NCBI GenBank assembly: GCA_965644495.1
Contig: CBFFSA010000006.1
Coordinates: 1-64,000 of the forward strand
Direction of reading: 5' to 3'
Source: Perkinsela sp. CCAP 1560/9
Taxonomy: Eukaryota; Protista; Euglenozoa: Kinetoplastea
DNA: 64,000 bases
Shown here: one piece after another, positions 2,511-54,685 of the stretch
Layout of the letters: each line of letters begins with the position of its first letter
How positions within the stretch are numbered: the first letter of the stretch is position 1
Program-made: the position numbers and the translations under genes
The notes under the pieces: generated by a model
Databases searched by the model: none
Seen by the model: the letters and a program-made list of their open reading frames with translations, nothing else
Told to the model about the DNA's origin: nothing

Positions 2511-3356
2511 AGGAGATTTACGCATTTTGTTGCGGTAAAGCTAAAGGAAATCGAGCGCATCGAGCGAGACAACAGTATTTCTTATAGAGTTCTATTTTTA
2601 ATTTCATGATTCTTTAATTCCAGGTTGCGAATTATATTCATATTATTTTTTCTCATTATAAGTGTCTGCATTTTTCAGAAAAAGATATTTTTGATTTTAT
2701 CTAATAGTTACACCCGACCTTGATTATATTGATTTGTTTGTGTCAATGATATTACCTTCAAATTTTGTCATGTTTTCAATGTTGCATTTTTCCGTACTAA
2801 GTTTGAGTCTTAGATAATACGACTTTCTACACTACTACAATTAAGGTCCCAAATTTGAAATCCGAACAAAAAATAAATGTCTTGATATTGAATGAACGCA
2901 GTAGTACATTGAGTGGGCTAAGAAGAAACTAATCCTACACTACAATATGCGTCAGGGTATGACAAAGCAAAAACATTATATTCGACGTACAAAAGATCTG
3001 CACGTTCGCTTAATTTGTAATTTGTTTTTAAAGCTATTAAAAGATTTCTTCGCGCGAATAAAGATACCCATACAGTATATTGAAGCTACAAGTAACACAA
3101 GACAGGACTATATCCTTATCATGATTACCACATACCATGATACTCAAATATTTTAGCCCAACTCATTCCGTTCTTTTACACAACCCCACCACCAGAACCC
3201 CTCTTCACACATGACCCAGACAACCTCCCCTACCCCCCTTTGTCTCTCCACCTCACCGTTCTTCACCCCTCCCCCTCCCTCTCCTCTTCCCTAAAAACCC
3301 AACCTCTTGCTCAAAACCAACACACACAGATCCCCCCCCCCACACACCCCCACCCC

Positions 3357-4928
3357 ATGCGAAAACCAACCCTTCGTCTCTCCCCCCCCTCCCCCTTCCG
3401 TCCCCTCTTCGCCCATCTCCGCATCCCGGAGGGCCACTGGACGGACTGGGGGCTCCTCGACCCCCTGCGCCCCCCCTCGCTCCACCCCCTCGGGGACAGC
3501 CTGATCCAGCGCGTGGTGCACGACGCCCTGGTGGCGGGGGTGGTGGGGGGGCAGCGGGGTGGGGGGGGTGGACCGGTGGCCAGGGAGGGGGGAGGGGGGG
3601 GTCCACCCCCAGCAACAACAACAACAACAACAACAACAACCCCCACAACAACAACAGGAGTCCCGGATATCTCCTCCTCCCCGTTTTTCCTCTCCCCGGA
3701 GTTCCTCCGTGGGTGCGGGGCTCCGTTTCTGCATCCGTACTACCTGCGGATGGTGGGGGAGGAGGTGGGGTTGCTGGAGCTGGGGTGGGGGCCTGGGGAG
3801 GGGGGGGAGGACGCGGGGAGGGCCTCCCCCCGGCTCTTCGCGGGGAGCCTACACGCCCCGGATGGTTTCTCCACCTCGCTGTGCCTCCCGGGGGACCGTT
3901 TTGCCCCCTCGCCGTTGCCGCGGCGGTTGGCGCATTTGATGGCGGCGGTGAGGATGGAGAGGGGGAGGGGGAAGGCGGAGGAGGTGGTGAGGAGGTGGTT
4001 TAGGATTCCCGGGGAGGGAGGGGGTGGGGGTGGCTCTTCTTCTCCGCTTTGCTCTTCTCCTCCTTCTGCTCTCGATGAGGAGATCGCGTCCTCTCCCGTT
4101 CCTGTGTCATGGGGACGGGCGGGGTTGGAGGCGCTACACCGGGTAGTGAAACGGTATCCCCATGCGACAGGGTCGGTGGCGTTGTCGGTGATGTCGGTGT
4201 GTGGGATTGATCCGGTGTGGGAGGTGCAAATAGAGCCGGAGGGGGGAGGGGCGGGGGGAGAAGAGGGGGGAGAGTGGTCTTCTTCGAATACGTACTCCCC
4301 GGTTGCTGAAAAAAGGGAGGAACCTTCCACCACGTCCACCACCCCGAGTCTCCTCACGGATGGGCTCCAACGGATGTACACAATGACTCCAGAGGCGTTG
4401 GACGCGGCGTTACAAGATCCCGGCTCGGGAATTTATCAAGGGAGTGAGTATGCCGGGAATCCGAATGACCCACCCCTCCCCTCAGGGTGGATGTCCCATA
4501 CCGAGTCTGTGCCGTACCAAAAACAACCCCTCCCCCCTCCCCGGAGCTACCTCGACACGATATGCAGCGTTCCGACCCCGTCTGCTGGTTCGGTCGGGAC
4601 CGAGGGGAGTGGATTCTTCACCTCCGCCCTGCGTCGCTTCCCGACCTCCTCGGAGCGCCCGGAATCCTATTTCGAGCACAACAAGGACATCGGCCGCGGG
4701 GTACGCTACCAAACCCATGGGTTAGATGCGGCCCGGTTCGTGGAGAGTCACTGTGTGCCGATGCGGCGACGGTTTTGTGTACGCGCGTACAACCGGGTAA
4801 CGAACGCGGTGATTGCCACAGCCACAGCCGGGAGTTTCACCGAGGCCCGGAATGAGGTCCTGGAGAGGTTTCTGGTGGGGCTAGCCGCGGATCTGCAGCG
4901 TTTGGACTATAGGGGTAGGGCGGGATGA
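3357..4928 (+). CDS. Hypothetical protein, possibly degenerate RNase III-like + dsRBD fold (mL44-like), probably mitochondrial
   Basis: First ATG at 3357 with Arg-rich N-terminus; LHPLGDSLIQRVV resembles the RNase III LGD motif; C-terminal FCVRAY..VIATATAGSFTEARNEV resembles a dsRBD. Confidence 0.45.
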   Translation: MRKPTLRLSPPSPFRPLFAHLRIPEGHWTDWGLLDPLRPPSLHPLGDSLIQRVVHDALVAGVVGGQRGGGGGPVAREGGGGGPPPATTTTTTTTTPTTTTGVPDISSSPFFLSPEFLRGCGAPFLHPYYLRMVGEEVGLLELGWGPGEGGEDAGRASPRLFAGSLHAPDGFSTSLCLPGDRFAPSPLPRRLAHLMAAVRMERGRGKAEEVVRRWFRIPGEGGGGGGSSSPLCSSPPSALDEEIASSPVPVSWGRAGLEALHRVVKRYPHATGSVALSVMSVCGIDPVWEVQIEPEGGGAGGEEGGEWSSSNTYSPVAEKREEPSTTSTTPSLLTDGLQRMYTMTPEALDAALQDPGSGIYQGSEYAGNPNDPPLPSGWMSHTESVPYQKQPLPPPRSYLDTICSVPTPSAGSVGTEGSGFFTSALRRFPTSSERPESYFEHNKDIGRGVRYQTHGLDAARFVESHCVPMRRRFCVRAYNRVTNAVIATATAGSFTEARNEVLERFLVGLAADLQRLDYRGRAG

Positions 4929-5132
4929 GAAAAAGGGGAGAATAGGGGGGGGGGGGTTGTGGTCTTTGTAAGCGTAAAAATAATAAGAAAGGTGTAGCCT
5001 TTGGAGTGCTTCGTTTCGAAAGGATGAGGGGGGGGGGATGTTTTTACTGTTTGTACGAAACCCTTTCTTGCGAAGAAAAACCAAAAACCCTTGCCCTACA
5101 CTCCTCTTTTTCCTTTACCTCTTTTCCCCCCC

Positions 5133-6917
5133 ATGCAACCCCAAGTCCTCCTCCTCCGCGAGGGCACGGACTGCTCCCAAGGCAGGCCCCAGCTCCTCTC
5201 CAACATCCACGCCTGTCTCGCGGTCGTGGACCTTGTGCGCTCCACCCTGGGGCCGTGCGGGATGGACAAGCTCCTCCGCGCGGGCTCGGGCCCCTGCGTG
5301 ATCAGCAACGACGGGGCGACGGTGCTGTCGGGCCTCGAGGTGGTCCACCCCGCGGCGCGGTGCCTGGTGGAGATGGCGCAGGCGCAGGACGCGGAGGTCG
5401 GGGACGGCACCACCACCACCGCGGTGCTCGCGGGGGAGCTCCTGCGCGAGGCCAGGCTGCTGCTCGAGGACGGGTTCCACCCCCGGGTGATCGTCGCGGC
5501 GTACCGCGCGGCGTGTGAGAAAGCGGTGGAGGTGGTGCGCACGCGGGCGGTGCCGTTTGGGGCGATGGGTGAAGAAGAGGAAACAGAAGAGAAAACGGAT
5601 AAAAAGGAAAGTGAGGAGAAGAAAGGGATCACTCAGGATCGTAAATTGCATGAACTGTTGGTGAAATGTGCCGCGACGGCGTTGAACTCGAAATTGATCT
5701 CCGCCCAGCGGTTTTATTTTGCGGAGATGGCCGTGAATGCGGTGTGTTGTTTAGGGGAGAGCAAAGATATCAATCGGATTGGCATCAAACAAGTCCATGG
5801 TGGAGGGGTGCGGGATTCGTTTCTGGTGAACGGGGTAGCGTTTAAAAAGACGTTTAGTTATGCGGGGTTTGAACAACAACCGAAACAGTTTGAGAAGCCC
5901 ACGGTGTTGTTGTTAAATGTGGAGCTGGAGTTGAAGGCAGAGAAGGATAATGCGGAGGTTCGGATTAAGGGCCCCTCGGAGTACCAAGCGATTGTGGATG
6001 CGGAGTGGCGGATTATCTATGAAAAGCTGGAGAACTGCGTAAACAGCGGGGCACACATTGTGCTCTCCAAGCTCCCGATCGGGGATTTAGCCACGCAGTA
6101 CTTTGCGGATCGTGGGATCTTTTGTGCTGGGCGGGTGAGCGCGGAGGACATGACCCGAGTCGCGGTGGCTACCAATGCCAAAATCCAATCCTCCACCCAT
6201 GACCTTCTCCCGGAGCATTTAGGCTCCTGTGGTGCGTTCGAGGAAAAGCAAGTCGGGGATGAGCGCTACAACCTGTTTACCGGCTGTGATGGGGCAAAAA
6301 CCGCCACCCTTGTGCTTCGTGGCGGTGCGCCACAATTTATTGAAGAAGCCGAACGTTCCCTGCACGATGCCATTATGATTGTCAAGCGCGCGTTGCAGCA
6401 CAAAGCCATTGTCGCGGGCGGGGGAGCCATCGATATGGAAATTGCCAAGGAGCTCCGGGACTATGCTCGATTTGAAATCCAGGGAAAGCAGCAGCTCGCG
6501 GTGCACAGCTTCGCGAAAGCCATGGAGGTCATTCCCCATACGATTGCGGAAAATGCCGGACATGATGCCGCGATGATTTTAAATAAACTAAGGCACCGAC
6601 ACCATACGGATCAAAAGGAAGGAAAGTGGTATGGGGTGGATGTTAGCAATGGGGATATTGTAAACACGTATGAGACATTTGTGTGGGAACCCGAGATTGT
6701 AAAGATTAACGCACTGCACAGTGCCACCGAGGCGGCGTGTGTGATTTTAAGCATCGACGAGACAATTAAAAACCAAGAGAGTGAGGCTGGGGCCGGGTCC
6801 CCGGGGGCGCGAGGTGGGGGTGGAGGGGCACGCACGAATCTGTCCCAGCAGGGGATGGCGGGGATGGCAAAGGGTCTTCCCGGGGTGAAGACGCTGAAGG
6901 GACGAGGGGGGCGATAG
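5133..6917 (+). CDS. CCT7: T-complex protein 1 subunit eta
   Basis: MQPQVLLLREGTD.SQG start; STLGPCGMDK, ISNDGAT, GDGTTT, FKKTFSYAGFEQQPK, ELELKAEKDNAE. Confidence 0.96.
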   Translation: MQPQVLLLREGTDCSQGRPQLLSNIHACLAVVDLVRSTLGPCGMDKLLRAGSGPCVISNDGATVLSGLEVVHPAARCLVEMAQAQDAEVGDGTTTTAVLAGELLREARLLLEDGFHPRVIVAAYRAACEKAVEVVRTRAVPFGAMGEEEETEEKTDKKESEEKKGITQDRKLHELLVKCAATALNSKLISAQRFYFAEMAVNAVCCLGESKDINRIGIKQVHGGGVRDSFLVNGVAFKKTFSYAGFEQQPKQFEKPTVLLLNVELELKAEKDNAEVRIKGPSEYQAIVDAEWRIIYEKLENCVNSGAHIVLSKLPIGDLATQYFADRGIFCAGRVSAEDMTRVAVATNAKIQSSTHDLLPEHLGSCGAFEEKQVGDERYNLFTGCDGAKTATLVLRGGAPQFIEEAERSLHDAIMIVKRALQHKAIVAGGGAIDMEIAKELRDYARFEIQGKQQLAVHSFAKAMEVIPHTIAENAGHDAAMILNKLRHRHHTDQKEGKWYGVDVSNGDIVNTYETFVWEPEIVKINALHSATEAACVILSIDETIKNQESEAGAGSPGARGGGGGARTNLSQQGMAGMAKGLPGVKTLKGRGGR

Positions 6918-7315
6918 GGGGATTAGGGAGAGAGTGAAATGTGGAGGGGGAGTTGAGGGGGGATACGTGGAAAAGGAAACGGAGGCTGATTTGTATGGAT
7001 AACATTTGATATGTATTGGTTTTCAAAGCTTTTGGCAATACGCGCATGTAGTGTGGCAACATTTCATCTGATATATGATCATCTGGTTTTACGAATATTT
7101 TTCTATCTGACGCGCTATTGGCACAAGTACGAATGCGTTTTTTACCCCCATGGACATCGGAATATATTTCCCAACATATAGAATAGAATGAACTACGTTA
7201 GCATTGATGCACTGTTTTCATTTTATCATTAGAAAACACAATGTAACGAGAGCATCAAGGCTACAATGTAATCAAACTTGTGTCGTTGGTCCGGTGCTGT
7301 TTCTGAAGATCCAGC

Positions 7316-8299: not shown

Positions 8300-9056
8300 T
8301 GAAGAGATATAGATTATCTACGACTTAAAGCGGATCGTTTTTAGATGTCTCTTTCTATGTTATCAATCTTGCCTTCGACATGCACTAAAAAATACGTACG
8401 TACATCGAAAAAAGTGTCTCTCTCCGCGCTCTTCCCCCTCGGCGTGACGGCGTCTTTTCGTTTTGCGACCTTCACGTCTCCCACCCTCGTACAGCAACCT
8501 AAAGTATCTGATACTGCTAACGTGGAGGGAGCGGAGGTCTGGGACCATAGGGGCGCATGTGGAATGGTCTGGGGTAGGGAGTTATTGTTCAGTGAGGTAG
8601 GGAGTGAGGGAGGGGAACCATGAGAGGGTTAAGGGGAGTAAGAAGGGTGAAGGGTTAGCAAGGGTGAAGGGTTAGTAAGTGGGAAAGTTGGAAATATAGA
8701 TAAAAAAGCTAGACTCTATACTACTCTATACTCCCCCCAATTATTTGCAAAGAAAACATACATTATATTTTGTAGTACAATACTGCACAGTGTAATATAT
8801 TTTGACGCCACATTTTTCCTTCTAGAGCTTTAGTGCTTTTGAAAAGGTCTATTAGATTCATGTGTGATGAGTACACGAGTCTTTCAAGATAATGCCTTAT
8901 CGAGTCTCCTTAGGATGCATACTGCTTGCTATTGATACTTCATCTTGATTATCGATCTTTGGTTGCTGTTGTTCTTCAATGACGTATCACTGAGCGCTGG
9001 TCAGTATCCTTTCTTTTCACCACACTATTAATTACGCAAGCGCAAAGATTGCCTTC

Positions 9057-11966: not shown

Positions 11967-12135
11967 GATATGAGCATTTTCTGTATATTTCTGACCAAGA
12001 AAAGTCTCCCAAGTTGTAAAAGGAAATGTGAAGCATGTCATCGTTTTACGATTACCCTTTTTTGACAAAAAAATACATCTCCTAGAAACACTCCTTACCC
12101 CCTAGAAATATTTCTTAACCCTCACACATACCATC

Positions 12136-13266
12136 ATGACCACCCCCCTTACCACCCCGCACCAAAAATGGACCCAACTCCTCGACCACTACACCTACCA
12201 CACCACACGCCTTTCCTCCATCATCCGTTTCCTCTCGTCTCACCCCCACACCGTTTGCCTTCCCCCATCCCCGAAAAAAGCAACACAGCACCTCCCCGTA
12301 GACACGGAGACGAAACTCGCAACCCCGGAAAAGATACTCTCGTGTGTGACACAAACCTCAGCACTGTTCCACCCTCCATGTGCACAGCGGATGTATTCCG
12401 AAACCCCCGGGCTGGAGGGTACACTAGAAAACAATAATGCAATAGAAAATTTTAATACAATAGAAAACCATAATACACTAGAAAACAACAATACAATAGA
12501 GAATTTTAATACAATAGAAAACCATAATACACTAGAAAACAACAATACAATAGAGAATTTTAATACAATAGAAAACCATAATACACTAGAAAACAATAAT
12601 ACAATAGAAAACAATAATAGAATCGAGAACAATAATACGCACAATTGTAATAATATGAATCATCATAAATGTGAAAGGATTTCAGAAACTCAAGTAGAGA
12701 GTATTGAACTTCCCAATGCATTAATAGCAAACAGATTTAAATGTTGGGGGAGGCGAAGGGAGAGGGAACGAAGAGAGGAGAACATCATTTCGTGTCTCGA
12801 AGGAGATATTAAATCGAGAAGAGGAAAATCCATGAAAAGAACACGTCGAGGGGGATGGGGGATTCCGATTTCGGATCATAGAAGCGTGTCGACGGAAAGG
12901 AATGGGGATAAGAAGCGGGAGAAGTGTTGTAGGGGAGAAGTGTTGCAGGGGAGAGAGGGACGGGGGGAAGAGAATCGCGAATACTTTTCGAATGTACAGG
13001 GGGATGAAATGATGTACTACCCGTTGTTTAAACCTTCGGTGCTGTTGGAGGAGATGGAAGCGTGTGACTCCGGGGAGTACGGAACAGACAGCGATAGTGA
13101 AATACAGGCAAGTTCCTTGGCTTCCGAGAGATGGACAGAGAACAGGCCATACGAAAGAGAAGGAAAAATGTATGTGGTGGATGGCGTGCAACGAATGCTA
13201 TACAAAATGGACAGGAGCCTTTGTTACTTGCAGCGAAAGGTTGCCCGTGCGGCTCGAATGGTTTGA
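12136..13266 (+). CDS. Hypothetical low-complexity protein with internal tandem repeat
   Basis: 376-codon ORF on the cluster strand; no recognisable domain. Confidence 0.5.
   Translation: MTTPLTTPHQKWTQLLDHYTYHTTRLSSIIRFLSSHPHTVCLPPSPKKATQHLPVDTETKLATPEKILSCVTQTSALFHPPCAQRMYSETPGLEGTLENNNAIENFNTIENHNTLENNNTIENFNTIENHNTLENNNTIENFNTIENHNTLENNNTIENNNRIENNNTHNCNNMNHHKCERISETQVESIELPNALIANRFKCWGRRRERERREENIISCLEGDIKSRRGKSMKRTRRGGWGIPISDHRSVSTERNGDKKREKCCRGEVLQGREGRGEENREYFSNVQGDEMMYYPLFKPSVLLEEMEACDSGEYGTDSDSEIQASSLASERWTENRPYEREGKMYVVDGVQRMLYKMDRSLCYLQRKVARAARMV
12421..12638 (+). repeat. 18-bp tandem repeat (ACAATAGAAAACAATAAT-like, ~12 units) with 54-bp higher-order period
   Basis: Encodes (TIENFN TIENHN TLENNN) three times plus degenerate units. 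Confidence 0.92.
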
Positions 13267-13405
13267 AAAAGTGTTAGTATTTCGAGTTAAAAAGGATGAA
13301 AGATACATGTACAATTTTAAACAATAAAGGTAGCACAACTGTATGCATTATTCCTAGCATTGCGAGGTTCTGCTACACTTTTTTGCATGCTTTAATTTTC
13401 TTTTT

Positions 13406-14857: not shown

Positions 14858-15116
14858 CTCTGCTCCTTTTTGGTAGTAATCGTAAAACTATCAGCATAAC
14901 TCTTTTTTATACAGAGCTTGTATGGCTTGCTAGACAAATTTTCTTGCCAGTTCAACTAAATATTCTTGCCAGAACCCTTCTTTGACGTAATAGAACCCGC
15001 AACGAACAACATTTTCAAAAATCATAAGGATTCGTTCGATCCGAGGATACAAAGTCAAGTTGAAAATCTCATTTTACATTTTGACCCGTTTTTCTTATTA
15101 TTGTGTTGACTTTTTC

Positions 15117-16172: not shown

Positions 16173-16705
16173 GCTATAGCGAAGTGTACGGAAAACTGTA
16201 CTTCTATCGGTAATCACAAGAATATAATGAGCCGACATTAGTAAACAAGTTAACAGAGGAATCAATAACGTTAAGGTAGAATATTTATTCAGAATACTCC
16301 ACACATATTCGAGACAAATATAATATTCCTTTCAATTATACATGTACTAATTTAATGGACTTTGAAAAATTGAGAATATGACAAAATGTAGAAAAACGTT
16401 GATTTTTCTACTTTATTTTTAGTTCCGCCGTATGTGTACTACGATGTATGCTTTTTTGGACCCTTCTAAAAGACGAACAGTCCTACAGTCTGCATTCAAG
16501 AATATTCATAACAAAAAAAATTATTCTCTTACCAGTTTATATTCTACATTTCCTTGATTAACTCAAAACGCGTTTCCCTGCTTCCTTCCCCAAACTCCCT
16601 TTATCCCCCTCCCCCCTTTTTTTACCCCTTTCCTCTTCTAACCCCCACCAAGAAAACTTTCCCTAAAGAAAACCTGTTTCACCCCCTTTCCCTCTTCACC
16701 TCTCC

Positions 16706-19045
16706 ATGAACCCCTCCCCCACCGCCTCCCCCCTCTCCACCCGGTGGTCCTTTGAGTCCTGCCCCCTGGATCGGCTCGAGAGCACACGCATGGTACTCCC
16801 CCTCGGGTGTCTCCTCGCTCCGCTACAAGCCCTCCCCTCCCCGACAGTGCTCCCCGAGACCCCCACGCGCTGCCAAGTCTGTAGCGCCGTGCTTAACCCC
16901 TACTGCGCCGTGGACCCCCGGACCCAGTCCTGGACGTGTGTGTTCTGTGGGGCCCGCACAGGGCTCCCGGTACGCAGACCCAGCGATGCGAGGGAGAGTC
17001 ACGCGACGGGTACAGGAGGTACGACGACGACGACAACAACAACGATCCCCGCAATGAGTCCGGGGTGTACTACGGTAGATTATGCACTCGTTTCGAGTCC
17101 TGGGGAAATCGAAAGCTCCTCGGGGCTTTCGCTTGTGTTTGTTATGGTCGTGGATATCTGCGTGCCGACGGTGGGGGAGTTGGAGGCGTTGAAACGACAT
17201 TTAGTAAAGGTGTTAGGGAGTCTGCCGTATGGTGCGTACGTTGGGTTGATTACGTATGGCACAACGGTACAGATTCACCAGACAAGGCGTAGTGGGGCGT
17301 TTCAGCGGTGTTGTACCTATCGCGGTACCGTCGAGGTGAGTTGCGAGGATATTCGTCGAACGCTGGGGGTTGACCCGCAGAGTCAGGTGTATCTGAGCCC
17401 TGTGGCAGAGGCAAGAGAGGCGTTGGATGTGCTGTTTGAGGAATTGCAGCCGGATCTGTGGCCAGTGGAGAAGGGCCATCGTGCGTTGCGCTGCACTGGA
17501 GCTGCCATATCTGCCGCTACATCGTTGCTGCAGTGTTTTTATCCCAAGACCCCAGCACGTGTGCTTACTTTCGTGTCCGGTATATGCACCGAAGGCCCGG
17601 GTCGAGCTGTTGATGTGGCCAAAACAAACTTGATTCGAGGACATGCAGATATACGGGACCAGACTGCGGCAGCGAAACATTGGCCATCATCCATCAGCTT
17701 CTACGCCTCGTTGATGAGACGAATGGTCAGCCATAGTTATGTTCTCGACGTTTTTAGTGCGTGTCTGGACCAAACAGGACTTGCGGAGATGAAAACTTGC
17801 ATTCAATGTACTGGAGGTACTCTCCTCATGGTGGATGGGTGGCAAAAGCCGCACTTCGCGAAGAGTTTGGAGCAGTATTTCCTTAAGGACGACACGACGA
17901 ATAGACCTAAGATGTTTTTCAATGTGAGTTTTGAGGTGCAAACTACACCGAATTGGAAGGTAATGGGGGCAATTGGACCTTGTATAGGAGGCGTGAAGAA
18001 AAGTTCCAGCATTGCAGATACGGAAATGGGTATGGGCGGCACTGCTCAATGGCTATCCAGCACCATGGCGGAAGATACAACTCTGGCCGTTTATTTCGAA
18101 GCACATAATTCCAATGGTACGAACACGACTTCCTCTGAACCACTGAAGGATTACCGATTTGTTCAATTCGTGACAAAATACGTTTGCGTGAACGGGGAAA
18201 CACGCATAAGAGTCTCGACACTTCCTCACCGCATTCATCACGGAACTGATTTCAATGCGCTCGGACAGACTTTTGATCAAGAAGCGGCGGCGGTACTCGT
18301 CGCTCGCCTGTGTGCACACAAGACGGAATCCAGCTCTATGTTTGATGTGTTACGGTGGCTGGATCGCCACCTGATTCGATTCGTACATCGTTTCGCAACT
18401 TTTAACAAGGACGATCCGCGCTCATTACGGCTGGGACCTCGTCTGAGTTTCTTTCCCATTTTTATGTACCACCTAAGGCGTTCCCCGTTCCTACAGTTCT
18501 TTAACAGCTCACCGGACGAAACAGCAAATTACCGTATACAGTTATTTCGTACACAACTACGTGACGCTATTTTGATGATTCACCCCACACTTGTGAGTTA
18601 TACTATGACAGGCCCAGAGTCTCCTGTTCCCTTGGACGAATCCGCCATACAAGACGAGAACATCCTAGTTCTGGACACCTTTTTTGAGATTGTTATTCAG
18701 TACGGTGTGACCATTCAAGAATGGATTAAGGCAGGATACGAAAAGAATCCGGATTACGCGCATTTCCGGGCTTTCCTAGATCGACCCCGAAAGCATGTAC
18801 AAGAACTTTTGCGGGGAAGACAACCGGCACCTGTTTTATACGAGTGCAGTAAGTTCGATCCCTCAAGTCGCATTCTGATGAACCGGATTAATCCTTCGCG
18901 CTCGCGTACCACAAAGAATCAAGGCGCTCAGCTGCCCAATAATGTTTTGTATGGAAAAGGCTCGGAGGAGTTGATGTGGACAGACGACGTCACGTTACAA
19001 ACATTTACGGATCACTTAAAGAGAGTTGCTGTACAGAATCAATAG
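16706..19045 (+). CDS. SEC23: COPII coat protein Sec23
   Basis: RCQVCSAVLNPYC..W.C.FC zinc finger, RCTGAA, CTEGPG, FDQEAAAV, LRWLDR.LIR, HLRRS.FL..FNSSPDET. Confidence 0.96.
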   Translation: MNPSPTASPLSTRWSFESCPLDRLESTRMVLPLGCLLAPLQALPSPTVLPETPTRCQVCSAVLNPYCAVDPRTQSWTCVFCGARTGLPVRRPSDARESHATGTGGTTTTTTTTIPAMSPGCTTVDYALVSSPGEIESSSGLSLVFVMVVDICVPTVGELEALKRHLVKVLGSLPYGAYVGLITYGTTVQIHQTRRSGAFQRCCTYRGTVEVSCEDIRRTLGVDPQSQVYLSPVAEAREALDVLFEELQPDLWPVEKGHRALRCTGAAISAATSLLQCFYPKTPARVLTFVSGICTEGPGRAVDVAKTNLIRGHADIRDQTAAAKHWPSSISFYASLMRRMVSHSYVLDVFSACLDQTGLAEMKTCIQCTGGTLLMVDGWQKPHFAKSLEQYFLKDDTTNRPKMFFNVSFEVQTTPNWKVMGAIGPCIGGVKKSSSIADTEMGMGGTAQWLSSTMAEDTTLAVYFEAHNSNGTNTTSSEPLKDYRFVQFVTKYVCVNGETRIRVSTLPHRIHHGTDFNALGQTFDQEAAAVLVARLCAHKTESSSMFDVLRWLDRHLIRFVHRFATFNKDDPRSLRLGPRLSFFPIFMYHLRRSPFLQFFNSSPDETANYRIQLFRTQLRDAILMIHPTLVSYTMTGPESPVPLDESAIQDENILVLDTFFEIVIQYGVTIQEWIKAGYEKNPDYAHFRAFLDRPRKHVQELLRGRQPAPVLYECSKFDPSSRILMNRINPSRSRTTKNQGAQLPNNVLYGKGSEELMWTDDVTLQTFTDHLKRVAVQNQ

Positions 19046-19376
19046 GGGCATGGCGCCATTCCGCATTCATAAAGTACCGCTTTCGATTTTAAAGACAGCT
19101 ACAATTTGTGGTCAAAACGTCAAAGAAACAGAAAGTTCAAGTACCCGAATTAATGTTTTTGCTATCTATTCTGATTCATGATAGTGCAAATGGAACATTG
19201 ATACTACATTTATATTTTGACACACTTTCAAGCGAAAAATCAGATAGAAATCGACCTTTCTTGCCTTTATGCTCATCTAGTCATCATTCATTCATTCATT
19301 TTTTTATGATTCGGCTCGACTCATATTAATCGACTCCAAAATCCCATAATTCGGATTCTTTCAATCCTGCGCCGAA

Positions 19377-21518: not shown

Positions 21519-21974
21519 GAGCAGAACGGAAGGGAACCACTCACGTTTAGAATAATGTGATCGTTCTTCTGACAATTATTCTTCTTCGTACGGTAAGAAA
21601 ACCCTGACCACACAATTTGTTACGCTTAGGCCGAATCTTTTGGTACATTCTTAAGCAATGACTTGCTATTTCTACACGGTACGAGTTAAAGTTTTGTGGG
21701 TGGTATGCAGACACCACATATGTACATACAGATATGTACATGTACATATCTTATACTGCGCCCATTCTTACGTAATTGTACGTATCTACTTATCTTACAT
21801 CCGTATGTCGTACACCTGACGTATGTATCGTACATCGCTAGTAAGACCAATGAGAATCTTAGTGAGCATTCGACGGATTTTCGAGTAAATGTTTTTTATA
21901 GTATGAACTTTTTAGCATCACAAAGCAGTACTCGACAAACGACGCACTGGGAGGCCAACAAATCGTAAATTTGG

Positions 21975-22799: not shown

Positions 22800-22906
22800 T
22801 CATTCAACTCAACAAAGAAAAGAAAAGGCTGCCAGCCACTTGCACCTTTGTATGGATAATCAACTGACTGTTGCATACTCACTTTCTTATGGCTTTTAGG
22901 GAAATA

Positions 22907-23877: not shown

Positions 23878-23960
23878 TATTAGTAATATGTGAATTTACA
23901 ACATATTTCTTCTCTGTCTTTTCTTCTTTTCTTCTTGTCTTTTCAACATTTCTCCACAAA

Positions 23961-24683: not shown

Positions 24684-24916
24684 CTCAATATCGCGTGATC
24701 TGGGTTTCCCAAGACAATGGGGGATTTAAAAGCGCCCAAAGGGTACGATGAAAGTCTTACTCAACAGGTCTTCCTACATGGACTCGTATTGTTAATTTAC
24801 TTTTTGTTTTTGATATCAATATTACCCAGGCTTCCTTAGAGTCAAAAGAAGGAAATCCTATGCCTGAAAAATAATCTTTGTAGTTAACCGATCGCATGTA
24901 CATGTAATCTTTAGTA

Positions 24917-26098: not shown

Positions 26099-26657
26099 AA
26101 CCAGCATTCTGCTTTTTCATTGACCGACATTAACACACAAAGACTAGAAACTGTTTTAATGAGGGGTCTGGAGCACTCTATTTACCGGCTAGTAAGTACT
26201 AGTCATCCAGGAAGGATAGACGCTTTTGACAAGAGGTATTAGTAATTCTTTTTTAAGTTCTTCGTTAAATGAGGTGTTTGTTTTCAATTTAGAAGGCACC
26301 ACTGCTGCGCGCTTCGCGTTGAAAACTACTTCTGCGTTTTAGCGAAGCGCACAAAAAAGAAAACATTATCGAAAAGATGAAGAATAATTTATTTTTCTTG
26401 TACTGTATTACCGTGTCCCCCTTCATAATTTCACTGTTTTTGTTGACTTCTTCTTAATAATCGGAGGTAGAGCGGGACTTATACAACCACCACAATTTAC
26501 AGCTGTGCAACAGCTCATACTTTCTTACAAGTGCTTGAACGCGCGTAAGCGCTCACTGTCGTGGTGCGCTTAAAAAAAGTTGCTACACCTCATTCTCCAC
26601 TCTACACATATTCACTGCAACGAATTCATTTTTTTAAGCTATGTCACCATTTTCTTC

Positions 26658-28349
26658 ATGTTTCATGTGACTCCTCACACCCTACGCGCTGGAATTGAAC
26701 TCCCTCGCACCCTACCCCGACGCTACGGGTTCGCATCCTCCGCGGAGGTAGACATCACCCACGCCGTGCTGGACGCCTTGGGACGTGCACAACTTCAAAT
26801 TGGTACCTCCTTAGTCCCCCATCTCACCTACATGCTAGTCAGCGCAAAGCACAACGAGGCCCGACACGCGCACAGGGCGCTTCGATCGTGTCTGCGCAAC
26901 CACTGGGGGGCTCACCATTTAAACGGGATGGTTGCACTTAGCGTGGTCGCCCCTCGTCAGCTCGTTGCCGGGGGGTTTGTGTCCATCGCTGTGGCGCATC
27001 TCCCGGGAGCCCGTGTGGTCCCGCTGCGATCGTGGCAGGAGGTCGCGGCGTGTGGACGGGAAGGGGGCGGGAGTGCCACCGCCTTGCTGTTTTGTGACGC
27101 GCATATTGCCGAACGTGATGTTCGGTGGGCACAGCGAAGGTTGGAACGGTACTGTGAGCGGTTCCACAGGTGTGTTGGGGGGTTGGTCCCGACGTTTCAG
27201 AACCAACCCGGGATGTGGGTGATGAATGGGGCCAGGGAAGAGGGAGAGAAAGGTGCGGAGGAGCAAGAGTCGTGTGGTGAGGTGGCGGGAGTTGGATTTT
27301 GGGGTGGAGGGGTAGAGGTGGATGTCTCAGTGGTTCCGCCGTATGTGTCTTCTCCTGTCACAGAGGAGTCTGACACGGGAGAAAGTCCCCAGAAGAGTGT
27401 GGAGTGTATTGTTACGAAGGTGGATACCCAAGTCGTGGAGGATCCAGAGGCGAAGCTGGTAAGTGTGCTTACATCATCCAATACGGGAGAAAACATGCCG
27501 GCGTCGTTTTCCGAAATGCCCGTGATAGCAGAACTTGACGGAATTCCATCCCTCCAACGACTACAGAATCTTTTTCCCGAGGCACTTCCAGGAGATGTGT
27601 ACGCGAAAATATTGGATCCCATTTCTCATACGCAGTACCTCTGGGGGTCCAGAATGCCCGGTTCACCCGATTCAGTGCTTTGCCTGCAGCCTCTCCCGTC
27701 CACGTACGGCAAAACCATAAATGCGGGCTCCCGAATTATCTTGGGTACCGTTTCAAAGCAAACAGACGCTCACAACTGGGCGGGAGAAATCCTGAAAGCT
27801 GCTCGGTCCCGCGCAAAAAAGGACCAGTACGGATTTATCATTTCTAGCGATGCAGCTGAGGAAACAATGAAGAACGATACACGCAAACAAGCGGAACCCT
27901 TCTCTCTGTCGAAGGGAGGGAAAAATTCGGATGTAAAATCTGATGCGCAACTGTATGGGGTAAAAAACAATGTCGAAGAGAAAAATAGCATTTCTCCCAG
28001 TAGCAAAGGTGCTAGAGATGACGTTACACAGGCATTCACGAACGAGAACAGATTATGGTTATCTTTTTCTAACAAAAGCATGGATGATGTGCACAGCTGT
28101 TCAAGCCAATGGAATCTTGCCGTTCGATGCCTGATCGGGGGACCTGCTGATAATCGAGACGAAAATAAACTTGATAGGGCTGCAGTGATTAACAAAATGT
28201 TGTATCGGGGTCACATATCTAACCCCGGAGGAGTAAAATCCAGCTGTTTGTTCACTCCCGGCCAAATTGGGCCGCTTGTTTCCGGAGGCTTAGGAGATTC
28301 CCTCACATTTCTTCACACTCGAGCATCGGTCACGGCGTGTATATCATAA
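26658..28349 (+). CDS. Divergent FIST-domain-like protein
   Basis: N-terminal ASS...AV..AL and VSIAVAHLPGARV; IAELDG.P; C-terminal LFTPGQIGP...LHTRASV resembles FIST_C GEIGP..LH. Confidence 0.6.
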   Translation: MFHVTPHTLRAGIELPRTLPRRYGFASSAEVDITHAVLDALGRAQLQIGTSLVPHLTYMLVSAKHNEARHAHRALRSCLRNHWGAHHLNGMVALSVVAPRQLVAGGFVSIAVAHLPGARVVPLRSWQEVAACGREGGGSATALLFCDAHIAERDVRWAQRRLERYCERFHRCVGGLVPTFQNQPGMWVMNGAREEGEKGAEEQESCGEVAGVGFWGGGVEVDVSVVPPYVSSPVTEESDTGESPQKSVECIVTKVDTQVVEDPEAKLVSVLTSSNTGENMPASFSEMPVIAELDGIPSLQRLQNLFPEALPGDVYAKILDPISHTQYLWGSRMPGSPDSVLCLQPLPSTYGKTINAGSRIILGTVSKQTDAHNWAGEILKAARSRAKKDQYGFIISSDAAEETMKNDTRKQAEPFSLSKGGKNSDVKSDAQLYGVKNNVEEKNSISPSSKGARDDVTQAFTNENRLWLSFSNKSMDDVHSCSSQWNLAVRCLIGGPADNRDENKLDRAAVINKMLYRGHISNPGGVKSSCLFTPGQIGPLVSGGLGDSLTFLHTRASVTACIS

Positions 28350-29747: not shown

Positions 29748-30250
29748 CATCCATCCCGATGACGGCACGGGAGATGCCAACGAAATTATCATACATACCT
29801 GCGATACCGAGAAGGCGGAGCTTTTCACCGCCACATCGCAGGGTCTAAACAAACTTGTATCTTGGACAGGTTCGCTTGCTGTATGTATACATGACGAAAA
29901 GCCAAGATATTTTAATTCTAGGCTTAGGCTAGCGCGTATTTCATGCTTACACCTTCAGCAGCACATGCAGTAGAATATCTACTGCATGAAGGACACACAC
30001 TGGTATTTAAGACATACTACAGTAGAGTGTAGTTTTTATAGATTCTCTCTGAAAATCAACCAGTCGACCACAGGGGGTGTGGACCGGTTTTTTAGTTTCT
30101 GTCCAATTTCTTTCCGTGCATTGATTGATTGAAACGTACGAGTTAATGGCATTACCACAAATTTGTAGTAATCCTTTTATACCAACGTCATGCAAACTAT
30201 TTCTCCACTTTTGCGTACTTAAACCCCACTTCCCTACCCCCTACTCCTTC

Positions 30251-31354
30251 ATGCTTACCACCACAACCCTGTGGTTGGCCATCCTCCTTGGCCTCCACCC
30301 CTCTCCCCTCCCTCCCACCACCACCACCCCTCCCACCACCCTCACCCCCTCCTCCAGCCTCTACCCCGACCCCGTAACCTACTGGAACGACCGCCCCCTC
30401 TACAACGACCCCACATCCCCGATCCCTGCACCCCCCGCACCCTATGCCCCCCCCTCCCCCTCTTCCCCCCCTCCCCCCCCCTCCCTGGCCCCCGAATCCC
30501 TCCACCCCTCCCACCCCCGCTGCCCCCACTCCTGGACCGGGCCCCAGTGCGACCTGTGCCCCCTCCCCTTTGGCGCCCCCCACTGCAACCGGTGTCTCCG
30601 GGACCGCAGCCTCCTGCAAGCCTGGCTCCACCCCTACCCGCACTGCCCCGCGGTGGTCCCCAGTCGTGCCCCCTGGGGGTATGCGACCCCGGAGGCCATT
30701 GCGGCAGCGGAGGCGGCTGGGTCTTCTTCTTCTTCTTCTTCTTTTTCATCTTCTTCTTCACCTTCTTCTTCACCTTCTTCTCCATCTTCTTTTTCTTCCT
30801 TTGTTCCTTATTGTAATGTGACTACACTGTGTGAGGGACGGGCGGAGCGGGCGGAGTACGACTACGGGAGTAAACGCTGTGTGTGCCGGCAGTGTACCCA
30901 CATGTGGGAGGGGGAGGGGGAGCGGTGTGAGAGCTGCCGGGCCCCGTTTAAAGGGGAGAGGTGTAACGAGTGTATGGACCCGAGCCAGGTGTACCCGGGG
31001 TGTAGGGAGACGGGGGTGTGGGGGACGGTGAAACGGGTGTGGGATTCCAGGTGGGGGAGGCTGGATTGTGGCGCGACGGCGTGGGAGGCGAATGGGGAAC
31101 CGAGACGGGTGTTTTATAATTGGGAGCTGGGGCAGTGTACGGCGGAGTGTACGCAGGGGTGGACGGGGAACCGGTGTGAGTACTGTCCGAAACCGTTTAC
31201 GGGGAGGAATTGTGATGAGTGTATAGAGGGCGACCGCTCGTTTCCGATGTGTTACGCCACGAATGAGGAAAATTTTCGTGCGAAGCGGCTGCATTTGTTT
31301 CGAGGAACGGCGGTGTTGCACCCAGTGGGGTATGGTGCGAATGTCACGGAGTAG
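30251..31354 (+). CDS. Secreted Cys-rich laminin-EGF-like repeat protein (paralog 1)
   Basis: Hydrophobic N-terminus; three W.G..C..C..PF.G..C..C....(Y/F)P.C units. Confidence 0.8.
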   Translation: MLTTTTLWLAILLGLHPSPLPPTTTTPPTTLTPSSSLYPDPVTYWNDRPLYNDPTSPIPAPPAPYAPPSPSSPPPPPSLAPESLHPSHPRCPHSWTGPQCDLCPLPFGAPHCNRCLRDRSLLQAWLHPYPHCPAVVPSRAPWGYATPEAIAAAEAAGSSSSSSSFSSSSSPSSSPSSPSSFSSFVPYCNVTTLCEGRAERAEYDYGSKRCVCRQCTHMWEGEGERCESCRAPFKGERCNECMDPSQVYPGCRETGVWGTVKRVWDSRWGRLDCGATAWEANGEPRRVFYNWELGQCTAECTQGWTGNRCEYCPKPFTGRNCDECIEGDRSFPMCYATNEENFRAKRLHLFRGTAVLHPVGYGANVTE

Positions 31355-31628
31355 AAAGCTTAACCAAGGGCGGAAGGGAAAAAGCCCCGAATGGAGTCTC
31401 TGTATGATAGATTACTTCACTAGACTACAAAGTAGTGCGATTAGGTTAAAAAACAGTTTTTGAGACTCGAATTCAGTTCTAGGAACGTACTAGTAGCCGT
31501 TAGTGAAAAAATGTAAGAGGAAAGACGTGCACCGAATCTGGAGTCTTGTACTACGACTGTATCTTTAAATCCTCCTACCCTTTTTACTATCAATTTTCAC
31601 AGTATTATTTTCACAATTTACCCCTGCC

Positions 31629-50451: not shown

Positions 50452-50458
50452 ACAAATA

Positions 50459-50548: not shown

Positions 50549-50705
50549 TAATACAGTATAATAATGTATGGATGCTAGTGTACAATACGTAAATACGAAA
50601 ATGTATACAAATTGTTTAGAGCTATTGAAACTTAATCGAAACACAAACAATCGAAATATATATTATGTGATTCTTGAACTCAGATATGCTACTCTTTGTC
50701 ATTCG

Positions 50706-53055: not shown

Positions 53056-53542
53056 TGCTGTTCCTTTTGCATAACCTCTTTAAAGCCGTCCAAGGGAAAC
53101 GTCACATACTATTTAAATAAAAAAGTCAAGCATGTAAAGTTACTTCTATGAGCCCCGTAACAAAAGCGTTTCCCATACAAACTTTAGTACCACTTATGCC
53201 GAATAAGAATAGTGCTTGGCATTTTTAGTAAAATAGCACCCCTTATTACTCGTATTCGTATTATAAAAAATGCCTTTCTAAAAAGCTATAGCACAATAAT
53301 TTTACTGAATCTCTGACACAGCCAACTTTTGAAAAAGACCAAAATACCAGAAATAATGACCAGCAATGCGCACGAGATAAAAAAAGAAAAACGTTCGGAA
53401 ACGAAAATATAGAACTTCACATGAATATTCACCGTCGTCTTGAGATGTTGATTACCCCCTTTTAACCTCTTTATCACTACCGTAACATGCACTCTTCAAC
53501 ACAACACTACCTCCCTTACTCACTTCTTTAACTCCCCCCCGG

Positions 53543-54685
53543 ATGGCACCCCCCACTTCCCTCTCCGCTATCTCCAACGATTGTCCCTACTGCGCCGAGA
53601 ACCCCTACGCAACCCGTGACGAGCCCTTTCCCCCCCTCGCGCGCCAACACTACCCGAGCCGCTGGTCTTTCTACCGCGACGCACTCCGGTCCCCCCGCTA
53701 CGTCCTGGCCCCCATGGTGGACCAGAGCGCATTAGCGTTTCGCATGCTGTGCCGGTCCTACGGCGCCGAGCTGTGCTACACCCCGATGTTCCACAGTGCG
53801 CAGTTTTCCCACAGTGAGGTCTACCGCCGACGTGAGTTCACGACGTGTGAAGGGGACCGACCGCTGGTGGTTCAGTTCTGTGGGAACTCCCCAACGACCG
53901 TGCTGTCCGCGGCACAGTATGTTGAGAACCACTGTGATGCGGTGGACTTGAATTTAGGGTGTCCTCAAGGGATTGCACGACGTGGACACTATGGGAGTTT
54001 TCTAATGGAGGATTGGGCGTTGATTCATAGGATTATTCACACGCTTGCGGTGGAGTTGAGGGTTCCGGTGACGGCGAAGATTAGGGTTTACCCGGATGTG
54101 GAGAAAACAGTCGCGTATGCTCGGATGGTGGTAGAGGCGGGGGCGTGGATGCTGGCCGTGCATGGAAGAACGCGAGAGATGAAAGGAGCACAGACAAGCC
54201 TTGCGGATTGGGAGCAAATTCGAGCCATTCGAGAGGCATTGCCGTACGTTCCCGTCCTGGCGAATGGTAATATTTTAACTGGAGACGATGTGGAACATTG
54301 TCTACGCGCGACCGGATGTGCAGGCATATTGTCTGCGGAAGGTCTGTTGTACGATCCCCGACTTTTTTTAAAACCCACTGGTCAAATCTTGTACAACGGT
54401 AGGTATAAAAAACTATTGCCTCTTGACGTGTGCTTGATTGATACAGTAGAAGATGTTGTACGGCGTTACCTAGAGTACAGTCAAAGGTACGGAGCTGTTG
54501 CCTCGCACGTGAAAGCACATTTGTTTAAACTTTTGTTTCACCTCTTTGCTCACTACCCAGAGCTGCGCGTGAAACTGGGGGATAGTTGTGGAAATTCTAT
54601 TGACACGCTACCCAACTGTGCGGCAAACATCATAGCTCAGGCTAGATCAAATTTTCTGCTTCAAAGTAGTAATATATTATCGTAG
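53543..54685 (+). CDS. DUS1: tRNA-dihydrouridine synthase 1
   Basis: APMVDQS..FR, YTPM, DRPLVVQF, DLNLGCPQGIARRGHYGSFL, VHGRTRE, ANGNI. Confidence 0.93.
   Translation: MAPPTSLSAISNDCPYCAENPYATRDEPFPPLARQHYPSRWSFYRDALRSPRYVLAPMVDQSALAFRMLCRSYGAELCYTPMFHSAQFSHSEVYRRREFTTCEGDRPLVVQFCGNSPTTVLSAAQYVENHCDAVDLNLGCPQGIARRGHYGSFLMEDWALIHRIIHTLAVELRVPVTAKIRVYPDVEKTVAYARMVVEAGAWMLAVHGRTREMKGAQTSLADWEQIRAIREALPYVPVLANGNILTGDDVEHCLRATGCAGILSAEGLLYDPRLFLKPTGQILYNGRYKKLLPLDVCLIDTVEDVVRRYLEYSQRYGAVASHVKAHLFKLLFHLFAHYPELRVKLGDSCGNSIDTLPNCAANIIAQARSNFLLQSSNILS

What the first reader, a model, noticed from the sequence alone, without database searches (positions are those of the whole stretch)
3170..54230. Recurrent bipolar C-to-G skew domains embedded in genes: candidate replication origins or internal promoters
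Seen: at about 3.2-4.3, 5.1-6.1, 8.4-8.7, 12.1-13.1, 16.6-17.5, 26.7-27.5, 30.2-31.35 and 53.45-54.2 kb, a few hundred bp of strongly C-rich/G-poor sequence switch abruptly to G(T)-rich sequence. Polarity is always the same, and the pattern runs across UTR and CDS alike (CCT7, SEC23, DUS1); the rest of the window is not visibly skewed. The unit is strand-symmetric, with G-rich strands pointing outward. Known: a C-to-G switch is the leading/lagging signature of a bidirectional origin and is also seen at R-loop/G4-forming bidirectional promoters. Inference: a dense, sequence-encoded initiation system inside one co-oriented cluster, strong enough to rewrite protein sequence (Pro/Thr/His then Gly/Glu/Arg).
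Basis: partly seen in the sequence, partly recalled or inferred. Interest (0 to 1): 0.9.

Follow-up and report, generated by a model that had tools for sequence, protein, structure and literature searches.

The report
C-to-G skew islands inside genes
About one gene in six of this trypanosome-like protist carries a 1-kb patch in which nearly every freely changeable DNA letter has become C before a fixed point and G after it. This is the footprint of a two-sided, strand-specific DNA process that I did not find described and whose nature (internal transcription start, replication start or repair site) remains unproven.

Summary
The window holds eight clear C-then-G islands plus one weak one at 4.45-5.05 kb, each 0.3-1.2 kb and 54-66% GC against about 43% background. 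All have the same polarity.

The skew is strongest at silent sites: 51% C then 58% G on average, up to 79% and 86%, against about 22% outside. It runs into UTRs and shifts amino-acid composition.

- It is not a generic gene-start profile: 87 island-free genes are flat.
- Relatives lack it: 0 islands in 79 kb of four other kinetoplastid contigs, two of them syntenic.
- It is not classical GC-biased gene conversion. In the C half only C rises, in the G half only G.
- The two halves are not inverted repeats.
- G4 motifs are about 100-fold enriched, only on the outward-running strand.
- Island left edges sit at gene starts in 11 of 17 cases (3.2 expected).
- Two other assemblies or read sets of the organism show no excess polymorphism in islands.

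The polarity matches divergent Pol II start regions of T. brucei and is opposite to mapped T. brucei origins. I favour internal divergent transcription/R-loop zones (0.35), ahead of origins and repair hotspots. No RNA or nascent-strand data exist.

The scan found the same islands earlier on other pieces of this genome.

The parts
3111..4310 (.). Island 1. The C half is 3111-3491 (C 0.50, G 0.09) and the G half is 3492-4310 (G 0.42). It starts about 250 bp upstream of the first ATG of an unknown ORF (3357-4928).
4451..5050 (.). Weaker second island at the 3' end of the same ORF. C is 0.38 in 4451-4700 and G is 0.40 in 4751-5050. The G part crosses the stop codon at 4928 and abuts the C half of the next gene at about 5052.
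5054..6153 (.). Island in CCT7 (T-complex eta, ORF 5133-6917). The C half covers the 5' UTR plus the first 38 codons (4-fold C 0.79). The G half runs to codon 341 (4-fold G 0.66). It holds a 22-residue Glu/Lys-rich insertion that all seven orthologues lack.
6700..7100 (.). Solitary G-rich tail (G 0.37, C 0.15) across the CCT7 stop codon (6917), with no C-rich partner.
8410..8690 (.). Mini-island between two genes. C is 0.38 in 8410-8505 and G is 0.45 with C 0.08 in 8506-8690. Only an unverified 92-aa ORF overlaps part of it.
12051..13266 (.). Whole-gene island (ORF 12136-13266). The C half is 12051-12400 (C 0.40, G 0.11). An A-rich tandem repeat fills 12401-12740. The G half is 12741-13266 (G 0.36, C 0.14).
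16525..17524 (.). Island in Sec23 (ORF 16706-19045), switch at 16930. It starts 181 bp upstream of the ATG. It holds a poly-Thr insertion. Identity to the syntenic orthologue is 34% in the C half, 38% in the G half and 52% in the rest.
26570..27469 (.). Moderate island at the 5' end of an unknown ORF (26658-28349), switch at 26903.
30200..31399 (.). Strongest island of the window, covering a whole Cys-rich (EGF-like repeat) gene (30146-31354). 4-fold C is 0.58, then 4-fold G is 0.78. A (TCT)n Ser run lies at the switch (30807). The same Cys-repeat motif is spelt with C-rich codons on the left and G-rich codons on the right.
53396..54495 (.). Island in a dihydrouridine synthase gene (ORF 53543-54685), switch at 53812. 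It starts 147 bp upstream of the ATG.

Best explanation
Shown. The islands are real, specific to this lineage, and made at the DNA level by a strictly strand-specific substitution drive. On the strand that runs 5'->3' into a fixed point, A, T and to a lesser degree G have been replaced by C. Equivalently, on the strand that runs 5'->3' out of that point, any base has been replaced by G. The effect is strongest next to the point, fades within about 600 bp on each side, and overrides conserved amino acids.

Inferred. The one well-precedented chemistry I know that yields 'any base to G on one strand' has three steps. A base is lost from DNA exposed as a single strand, a C is inserted opposite the gap (Rev1-type bypass), and the exposed strand ends up with G. 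With that chemistry, the exposed strand is the minus strand left of the switch and the plus strand right of it. That is the pair of non-template strands of divergent transcription, or the lagging-strand templates of a two-way origin. It is not the 3' overhangs of a resected break.

My preferred reading is that each island is a compact internal site of divergent Pol II initiation and R-loop formation set inside a one-way gene array. G enrichment of the displaced strand would make R-loops and G4 more likely and so feed back on itself. In a trans-splicing organism such a site can lie inside a coding sequence without truncating the host gene's mRNA.
For: Strand-specific DNA-level drive:
- At 4-fold sites C is 0.51 in C halves and G is 0.58 in G halves, against 0.21 and 0.23 outside. 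Strong islands reach 0.79 and 0.86, with A and T at 0-0.08.
- At 2-fold sites, C halves show C/(C+T) = 0.69 but G/(A+G) = 0.46. G halves show G/(A+G) = 0.70 but C/(C+T) = 0.39. Outside the values are 0.42 and 0.40. There is therefore no symmetric AT-to-GC push.
- The drive runs into 5' UTRs and across stop codons.

Shape and structure:
- GC peaks at 0.64-0.69 at the switch and decays by about 600 bp.
- G4 motifs occur at 2.6 per kb on the outward strand only, against 0.02-0.03 per kb outside.
- The two halves share no specific complementarity (mean z = -0.18).

Distribution:
- The 87 island-free genes show a flat profile.
- There are no islands in 79 kb of four other kinetoplastid contigs, two of them syntenic prokinetoplastid relatives, nor in the closest relative's Sec23.

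Comparison with T. brucei:
- The polarity equals that of T. brucei start regions, where G/T runs on the coding strand drive directional Pol II initiation and H2A.Z deposition (PMC5579346).
- The polarity is opposite to T. brucei SNS-seq origins (PMC13179062).

Link to gene structure:
- Island left edges lie within -300 to +100 of an ATG in 11 of 17 cases, against 3.2 expected (P = 0.0002).
- Five of those starts are confirmed by domain or orthologue alignment: CCT7, Sec23, Dus, RPL18 and WLM.
Against: - There is no RNA, 5'-end, R-loop or chromatin data for this organism. The one possible RNA run holds next to nothing of the stretch.
- The switch lies inside coding sequence, not in the spacers where kinetoplastid start regions are known.
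- T. brucei start regions are 5-10 kb wide, GT-rich and sit at cluster boundaries. These islands are 1 kb, G-only (T is depleted) and internal.
- One island per 9-18 kb would mean far more promoters than any kinetoplastid is known to have.
- The place where a start site is most needed, 638-1094 between the telomere-like array and the first gene, has no GC-rich G arm. It shows only a G>C skew in AT-rich DNA.
- Rev1 was not identified. Three Y-family polymerase genes exist, and the one I could read is Pol eta.
- G-run and G4 counts equal what local codon usage predicts, so nothing suggests selection for G4 as such.
- No excess polymorphism is seen in islands, so an ongoing high mutation rate is not evident.
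Confidence: 0.35

Rival explanations
1. Fixed, efficient bidirectional replication origins. The lagging-strand template on each side of the switch is the exposed strand and becomes G-rich. Alternatively, origin-proximal DNA is laid down by an error-prone polymerase.
For: The polarity is correct for exposure of the lagging-strand template (inference). A spacing of 2-40 kb is in the range of eukaryotic origins. G4 motifs are strand-oriented around the centre.
Against: The skew fades within about 600 bp instead of running along the replicon. Mapped T. brucei origins are 85-92% intergenic and AT-rich at the centre, with G upstream and C downstream, the opposite polarity (PMC13179062). An origin model gives no reason for left edges to sit at gene starts.
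Confidence: 0.2
2. Recurrent DNA breakage and homologous repair at fixed intragenic hotspots. Error-prone repair synthesis primed from the two 3' ends, or strand-specific mismatch correction of heteroduplex, imprints G on the newly made outward strands.
For: - The tract length and the centre-peaked profile match conversion and repair-synthesis tracts.
- Low-complexity insertions lie in or near the switch.
- A Spo11-like gene is present.
- Two assemblies differ in 0.5-1.5-kb blocks of about 1% divergence, as expected if haplotypes recombine.
- Runaway GC evolution that rewrites proteins is known from gerbils (PMC7403616).
Against: Classical GC-biased conversion predicts that both C and G rise in both halves. 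They do not. If the mutated strand is the exposed 3' overhang, as in break-associated mutation clusters, the expected polarity is the reverse of the one seen. I know of no polymerase bias that inserts G. The divergent blocks do not coincide with islands, and islands show no excess polymorphism.
Confidence: 0.2
3. Selection on the mRNA or protein. Examples are a G-free unstructured 5' region for translation, long-range C:G pairing within the mRNA, or adaptive low-complexity protein segments.
For: Islands favour gene 5' ends and include the 5' UTR. Several genes have a C-rich 5' end and a G-rich 3' end.
Against: - The two halves share no complementarity beyond composition.
- The same pattern occurs mid-gene, at 3' ends and in a largely non-coding spacer.
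- It changes otherwise invariant residues of CCT7 and lowers Sec23 identity.
- Orthologues in relatives function without it.
- G-run counts equal the synonymous-shuffle expectation.
Confidence: 0.05
4. Artefact of sequencing or assembly, or foreign DNA.
For: None found.
Against: Contigs of three separate DNA runs and an independent ENA assembly reproduce the islands. Conserved kinetoplastid genes read through them in frame.
Confidence: 0.01

Closest known systems
Divergent RNA pol II transcription start regions of Trypanosoma brucei (GT-rich promoters; Wedel et al. 2017, PMC5579346)
   Same: In both, G runs lie on the strand that is the coding strand for outward transcription on each side, so the plus strand reads C-rich then G-rich. 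Both occur in a kinetoplastid with polycistronic, trans-spliced genes. In T. brucei, synthetic 210-416-bp G/T-run elements suffice for directional initiation.
   Different: T. brucei regions are several kb wide, lie between gene clusters, and are rich in T as well as G. They are not reported to overwrite coding sequence. The islands here are about 1 kb and lie inside genes. They are G-only, far more extreme (up to 86% G at silent sites) and far more numerous. No initiation has been shown.
GC-skewed CpG-island promoters and gene ends of vertebrates that form R-loops (Ginno et al. 2012, 2013; from my own knowledge, not read here)
   Same: Both show positive GC skew in the direction of transcription and a bipolar skew at bidirectional promoters. 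Both are kb-scale and GC-rich, with G4 on the displaced strand.
   Different: The vertebrate skew is modest, lies mainly in the 5' UTR and first intron, and is tied to DNA methylation biology. It does not recode proteins.
Replication-origin skew switches (bacterial oriC; T. brucei SNS-seq origins, PMC13179062)
   Same: Both show an abrupt change in the sign of the strand composition at a point, with strand-specific G4 around the centre.
   Different: Bacterial skew spans the whole replichore. T. brucei origins are intergenic, AT-rich at the centre and of opposite G/C polarity.
GC-biased gene conversion hotspots and runaway GC evolution (gerbils, PMC7403616)
   Same: Both involve local, lineage-specific GC enrichment strong enough to change amino acids in conserved genes.
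   Different: Gene conversion bias raises G and C alike on both strands. Here only one of them rises in each half.
Strand-coordinated mutation clusters in single-stranded DNA at breaks (kataegis-type; Roberts et al. 2012; from my own knowledge)
   Same: Both show a switch from changes on one strand to changes on the other across a point. The abasic-site route with C insertion gives changes to G or C.
   Different: Those clusters are somatic or one-off events at cytosines in a deaminase context. The exposed strands at a resected break are the opposite ones to those implied here.

Membership tests
Kinetoplastid replication origin (T. brucei SNS-seq topology, PMC13179062) | Lies in an intergenic region | tested here: not met
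   The switch lies inside an ORF in all 17 scored islands. Only the unscored mini-island at 8.4-8.7 kb lies in a spacer.
Kinetoplastid replication origin (T. brucei SNS-seq topology, PMC13179062) | [quoted passage not shown] | tested here: not met
   The centre is 64-69% GC, with C upstream and G downstream (compared).
Kinetoplastid replication origin (T. brucei SNS-seq topology, PMC13179062) | Short nascent strands or fork divergence at the site | not testable with these tools
   No such data exist for this organism.
Replicative strand skew (bacterial type) | Skew persists along the replicated arm | tested here: not met
   The skew returns to zero by about 600 bp from the switch. The cumulative skew shows only local V-shaped dips.
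Kinetoplastid divergent pol II start region (PMC5579346) | G/T runs on the coding strand of each outward direction | tested here: inconclusive
   G runs and G4 motifs lie on the outward strand of both arms, but T is depleted rather than enriched.
Kinetoplastid divergent pol II start region (PMC5579346) | Located at boundaries of polycistronic clusters | tested here: not met
   All islands lie inside one-way gene arrays. The minus-strand ORFs nearby are DDE transposases.
Kinetoplastid divergent pol II start region (PMC5579346) | Primary (5'-triphosphate) transcripts, pol II and H2A.Z enrichment | not testable with these tools
   No RNA run holds the stretch.
GC-biased gene conversion hotspot | AT-to-GC bias that is symmetric for G and C | tested here: not met
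   At 2-fold sites C halves raise only C (0.69) while G stays at 0.46. G halves raise only G (0.70) while C stays at 0.39.
GC-biased gene conversion hotspot | Coincides with recombination or break hotspots | not testable with these tools
   Only indirect data are available. A Spo11-like gene is present, and the divergent haplotype blocks do not coincide with islands.
Inverted repeat / palindrome (cruciform or long mRNA hairpin) | The two arms are reverse complements of each other | tested here: not met
   The number of 7-mers shared between the left arm and the reverse complement of the right arm equals the shuffled expectation (mean z = -0.18).

The most novel reading that the evidence does not exclude
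A free-living or parasitic relative of Perkinsela has evolved compact internal initiation sites written into coding sequences, for divergent transcription with R-loops or for replication. A self-reinforcing, strand-specific 'any base to G on the displaced strand' mutation process has driven silent sites to 60-86% of a single base and recoded housekeeping proteins. If so, start sites could be read directly from the sequence in this genome, and it would be a natural example of runaway R-loop- or G4-linked mutagenesis.
Probability: 0.3. Interest if true: 0.9.

Novelty: new variant of a known kind. Interest (0 to 1): 0.8.

Why it matters
Kinetoplastid Pol II promoters and replication origins are notoriously hard to define by sequence. 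Here a genome seems to mark hundreds of fixed points with an unmistakable signature visible in the raw sequence.

Whatever the process is, it is strong enough to override purifying selection on CCT7, Sec23, ribosomal protein L18, a protein kinase and others. That makes it an extreme case of a neutral or mutational force shaping proteins.

The strictly one-strand 'any base to C/G' spectrum also rules out the usual explanation for GC islands, GC-biased gene conversion. It points instead to chemistry on exposed single-stranded DNA. A single stranded nascent-RNA, DRIP or SNS experiment on this organism would decide between the readings.

Tried and rejected
- Generic 5'-end composition profile: rejected. 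The 87 island-free genes are flat.
- Codon-usage or translation explanation: rejected. The pattern reaches UTRs and a spacer and changes conserved residues.
- Inverted repeat or hairpin: rejected. An RNA duplex-energy test timed out and was replaced by a k-mer test.
- Classical gBGC: rejected by the 2-fold-site test.
- Selection for G4 motifs: no excess over synonymous-codon shuffles.
- 'Islands never cross gene borders': not testable with 17 islands. Observed 0 against 1.2 expected, P = 0.28.
- Conserved motif at the switch: none seen by eye in 17 aligned switches.
- Recent paralogue pairs to polarise substitutions: none close enough, best 36% aa identity.
- Genome-wide pattern mapping: only the first 100 places are listed.
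- Excess polymorphism in islands: not found.
- Rev1: not identifiable. Two of the three Y-family genes could not be fetched.
- Literature: no description in prokinetoplastid or kinetoplastid papers.


Full report
**What the window is.** The window is the first 64 kb of contig C6 of a 21-Mb, 110-contig genome. All large reading frames lie on the plus strand. They encode ordinary eukaryotic housekeeping proteins: S-adenosylhomocysteine hydrolase, CCT7, a lipoate ligase, Sec23, a SET protein, a GOST membrane protein and a dihydrouridine synthase.

The best protein matches are to the free-living prokinetoplastids PhF-6 and PhM-4 (CCT7 67%, Sec23 55-56%). Perkinsela and other kinetoplastids follow. 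The organism is therefore an unnamed, deep-branching kinetoplastid with one-way, intron-poor gene arrays. The minus-strand ORFs in the extra 200 kb I fetched are DDE transposases, not host genes.

**Checking the observation.** I used a detector that requires the left 300 bp to be C-over-G and the right 300 bp to be G-over-C.
- It finds 6 islands in the window and 11 in contig C1:1-200,000.
- Block shuffles give about one.
- The three hits of opposite polarity are junctions beside or between neighbouring C-to-G units.

Refined coordinates are given under 'parts'. I add a weaker island at 4451-5050 and a lone G-rich tail at 6700-7100.

Islands are 0.3-2 kb long and 54-66% GC against about 43% background. 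They are reproduced in contigs of three DNA runs and in an independent ENA assembly that is 99.76% identical over 19 kb. They are not artefacts.

**Nature of the signal.**
- At 4-fold degenerate sites C is 0.51 in C halves and G is 0.58 in G halves, against 0.21 and 0.23 elsewhere.
- In strong islands the values reach 0.63-0.79 C and 0.66-0.86 G. A and T are almost eliminated. The other strong base stays near or a little below background.
- First and second codon positions follow. Pro, Thr and His are enriched on the left. Gly, Val, Glu, Arg and Trp are enriched on the right.
- CCT7 has 27 lineage-unique replacements at otherwise conserved columns in the island, against 9 in the rest. They run in the expected directions: I>L and N>H on the left, and I>V, K>R, D>G and M>V on the right.
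- Sec23 is 34-38% identical to its syntenic orthologue inside the island, against 52% outside.

The second refutation test also fails. The 87 genes without an island have a flat C and G profile from -300 to +1700 of the ATG and around the stop codon. The islands are a discrete class affecting about 17% of ORFs.

**A new constraint: the drive is one-stranded.** Two-fold degenerate codons separate a general AT-to-GC push from a strand-specific one.

| Region | C/(C+T) at Y-ending codons | G/(A+G) at R-ending codons |
|---|---|---|
| C halves | 0.69 | 0.46 |
| G halves | 0.39 | 0.70 |
| Outside islands | 0.42 | 0.40 |

Together with the 4-fold data, where both A and T are lost to C on the left and to G on the right, the spectrum is 'any base to C' on the strand that runs into the switch. 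Equivalently, it is 'any base to G' on the strand that runs out of it. Classical GC-biased gene conversion predicts that both C and G rise everywhere, and it is not met.

Three further results describe the shape.
- The two arms are not inverted repeats.
- G4-type motifs are about 100-fold enriched, strictly on the outward strand. Their number is what local codon usage predicts, so nothing indicates selection for G4 as such.
- Averaged over 17 islands, GC peaks at the switch (0.64-0.69) and the skew decays to zero by about 600 bp on each side. This is the profile of something that starts or ends at a fixed point with variable reach.

**Relation to genes.** The skew pattern itself is strand-symmetric, but its placement is not.
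- The left edge lies within -300 to +100 of an ORF start in 11 of 17 islands, against 3.2 expected (P = 0.0002).
- The right edge lies near a stop codon in 7 of 17, against 3.9 expected (P = 0.07).

C-rich DNA has few stop codons, so called ORF starts could be pulled towards island edges. I therefore checked the starts. CCT7, Sec23, Dus, RPL18 and a WLM protein have starts confirmed by orthologue or domain alignment.

The C arm covers about 80-250 nt of upstream non-coding DNA, probably the 5' UTR. Short genes are covered entirely, with the switch near mid-gene. Examples are RPL18, the gene at 12136-13266 and the gene at 30146-31354. The other six islands lie mid-gene or at 3' ends.

Whether islands ever cross gene borders could not be tested with this sample. 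I could fetch only plus-strand clusters, so the anchoring has not been checked in clusters of the other orientation.

**Lineage specificity and age.**
- There are no islands in 79 kb from four other kinetoplastid contigs. These include Perkinsela and a syntenic relative that carries CCT7 and Sec23 side by side. About five would be expected at this genome's density.
- The Sec23 gene of the closest available relative (56% aa identity) has no island either.
- An independent assembly differs from the window by 32 single-base changes in 19 kb. These cluster in three blocks, and none lies in the three islands it covers.
- In read contigs, the island at 30.2-31.4 kb has the same variant density as its flanks, about 0.8%.

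I therefore see no sign of present-day hypermutation in islands.

**Mechanism.** The geometry, with G-rich strands running outward, fits any two-way process. The spectrum narrows the choice. The only well-precedented route I know to 'any base to G on one strand' is base loss in exposed single-stranded DNA, followed by insertion of C opposite the gap (Rev1-type bypass). This is my knowledge, not tested here.

Under that route the exposed strands are the minus strand on the left and the plus strand on the right. These are the non-template strands of divergent transcription, or the lagging-strand templates of a two-way origin. The 3' overhangs of a resected break are the opposite strands.

Between the two surviving readings, four things favour transcription/R-loops:
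- the 600-bp reach;
- the tie to gene structure;
- the match in polarity to T. brucei start regions, where G/T runs on the coding strand suffice for directional Pol II initiation and H2A.Z deposition (PMC5579346);
- the mismatch to mapped T. brucei origins, which are intergenic, AT-rich at the centre, and have G upstream and C downstream (PMC13179062).

G enrichment of the displaced strand would stabilise R-loops and G4, giving a feedback that could explain the extreme end state.

This stays an inference at about 0.35. No RNA or chromatin data exist. The islands are narrower, G-only and internal compared with T. brucei start regions. The chromosome-end spacer at 638-1094, where a start site is expected, has no such GC-rich arm.

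A repair-hotspot model remains possible if some unknown bias puts G into repair-synthesis strands. A Spo11-like gene and block-wise haplotype differences show that recombination is plausible in this organism.

**Comparison with what is known, and novelty.** I found no description of such islands in papers on prokinetoplastid genomes, Perkinsela, or kinetoplastid skew. The closest known things are listed above with their differences. The islands fail defining tests for kinetoplastid origins, replicative skew, gBGC hotspots and palindromes. They meet only the polarity criterion for divergent start regions. I class them as a new, extreme variant of the known 'skew switch at a bidirectional initiation site' signature.

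The scan has reported the same islands several times on other pieces of this genome. The new contributions here are:
- the two-fold-site test against gBGC;
- the synonymous-shuffle test for G4;
- the significance of 5' anchoring, with validated gene starts;
- the polarity comparison with published T. brucei origin and promoter maps;
- the lack of excess polymorphism.

**Limits.** All scored genes are on the plus strand. No RNA evidence was available.

Noticed in passing
window 1-637: The contig starts with about 53 copies of a 12-bp unit with a C7 run (C-rich strand reading inward), oriented as a telomere would be. An AT-rich 160 bp follows, then 300 bp with G>C skew before the first gene.
   Followed up: no
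window 26230-26350: A dispersed repeat of about 105 bp with an internal palindrome. The genome holds at least 581 candidate copies at 82-90% identity, some spaced 3,420 bp apart in an array on contig C15. Read depth is about 300 times that of the flanks. It has no Rfam match.
   Followed up: partly
window 22903-23881: An element flanked by inverted repeats of about 155 bp (22903-23057 and 23727-23881, 96% alike).
   Followed up: no
window 12401-12740: An A-rich tandem repeat of 54-bp units, coding Asn/Ile/Glu-rich repeats. It sits exactly between the C arm and the G arm of a whole-gene island.
   Followed up: partly
window 9914-29037 versus L029 (ENA contig): A second assembly of the same organism differs by 32 single-base changes that fall in three blocks (10.0-10.6, 13.6-15.1 and 27.95-28.6 kb, about 1% divergent). 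Long identical stretches separate them. This mosaic suggests recombination or loss of heterozygosity between haplotypes.
   Followed up: partly
window 5568-5640 and about 17100-17180: Low-complexity insertions occur inside islands of conserved proteins. CCT7 has a 22-residue Glu/Lys-rich insert that seven orthologues lack, and Sec23 has a run of eight Thr.
   Followed up: partly
window 4751-5050, 6700-7100, 8506-8690: Three consecutive genes end in, or are followed by, a G-rich, C-poor tail. Two of these tails cross the stop codon. This may be a 3'-end counterpart of the C-rich 5' ends.
   Followed up: partly
window 30146-31354 and 31629-32504: Tandem paralogues (36% identical) encode Cys-rich, EGF/laminin-like repeat proteins. 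The first is wholly an island. The second has only a C-rich start.
   Followed up: no
L024 (Logan transcript contig of a PhF-6-like relative), 73-1785: CCT7 of this relative has no island but shows a weak gene-long drift at third positions. C falls from 52% to 22% and G rises from 24% to 46%, from 5' to 3'. This is one gene only and could be chance.
   Followed up: no
L004 2218-6204 (G000 C1:12218-16204): Two minus-strand ORFs (48% identical) carry DDE_1 transposase domains. These pogo-like elements are inserted against the direction of the gene array.
   Followed up: partly
G000 C1:395279, 400432, 405650, 407268: The same G-run motif recurs at intervals of 1.6-5 kb. This suggests a tandem gene family whose copies all carry the same island.
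   Followed up: no
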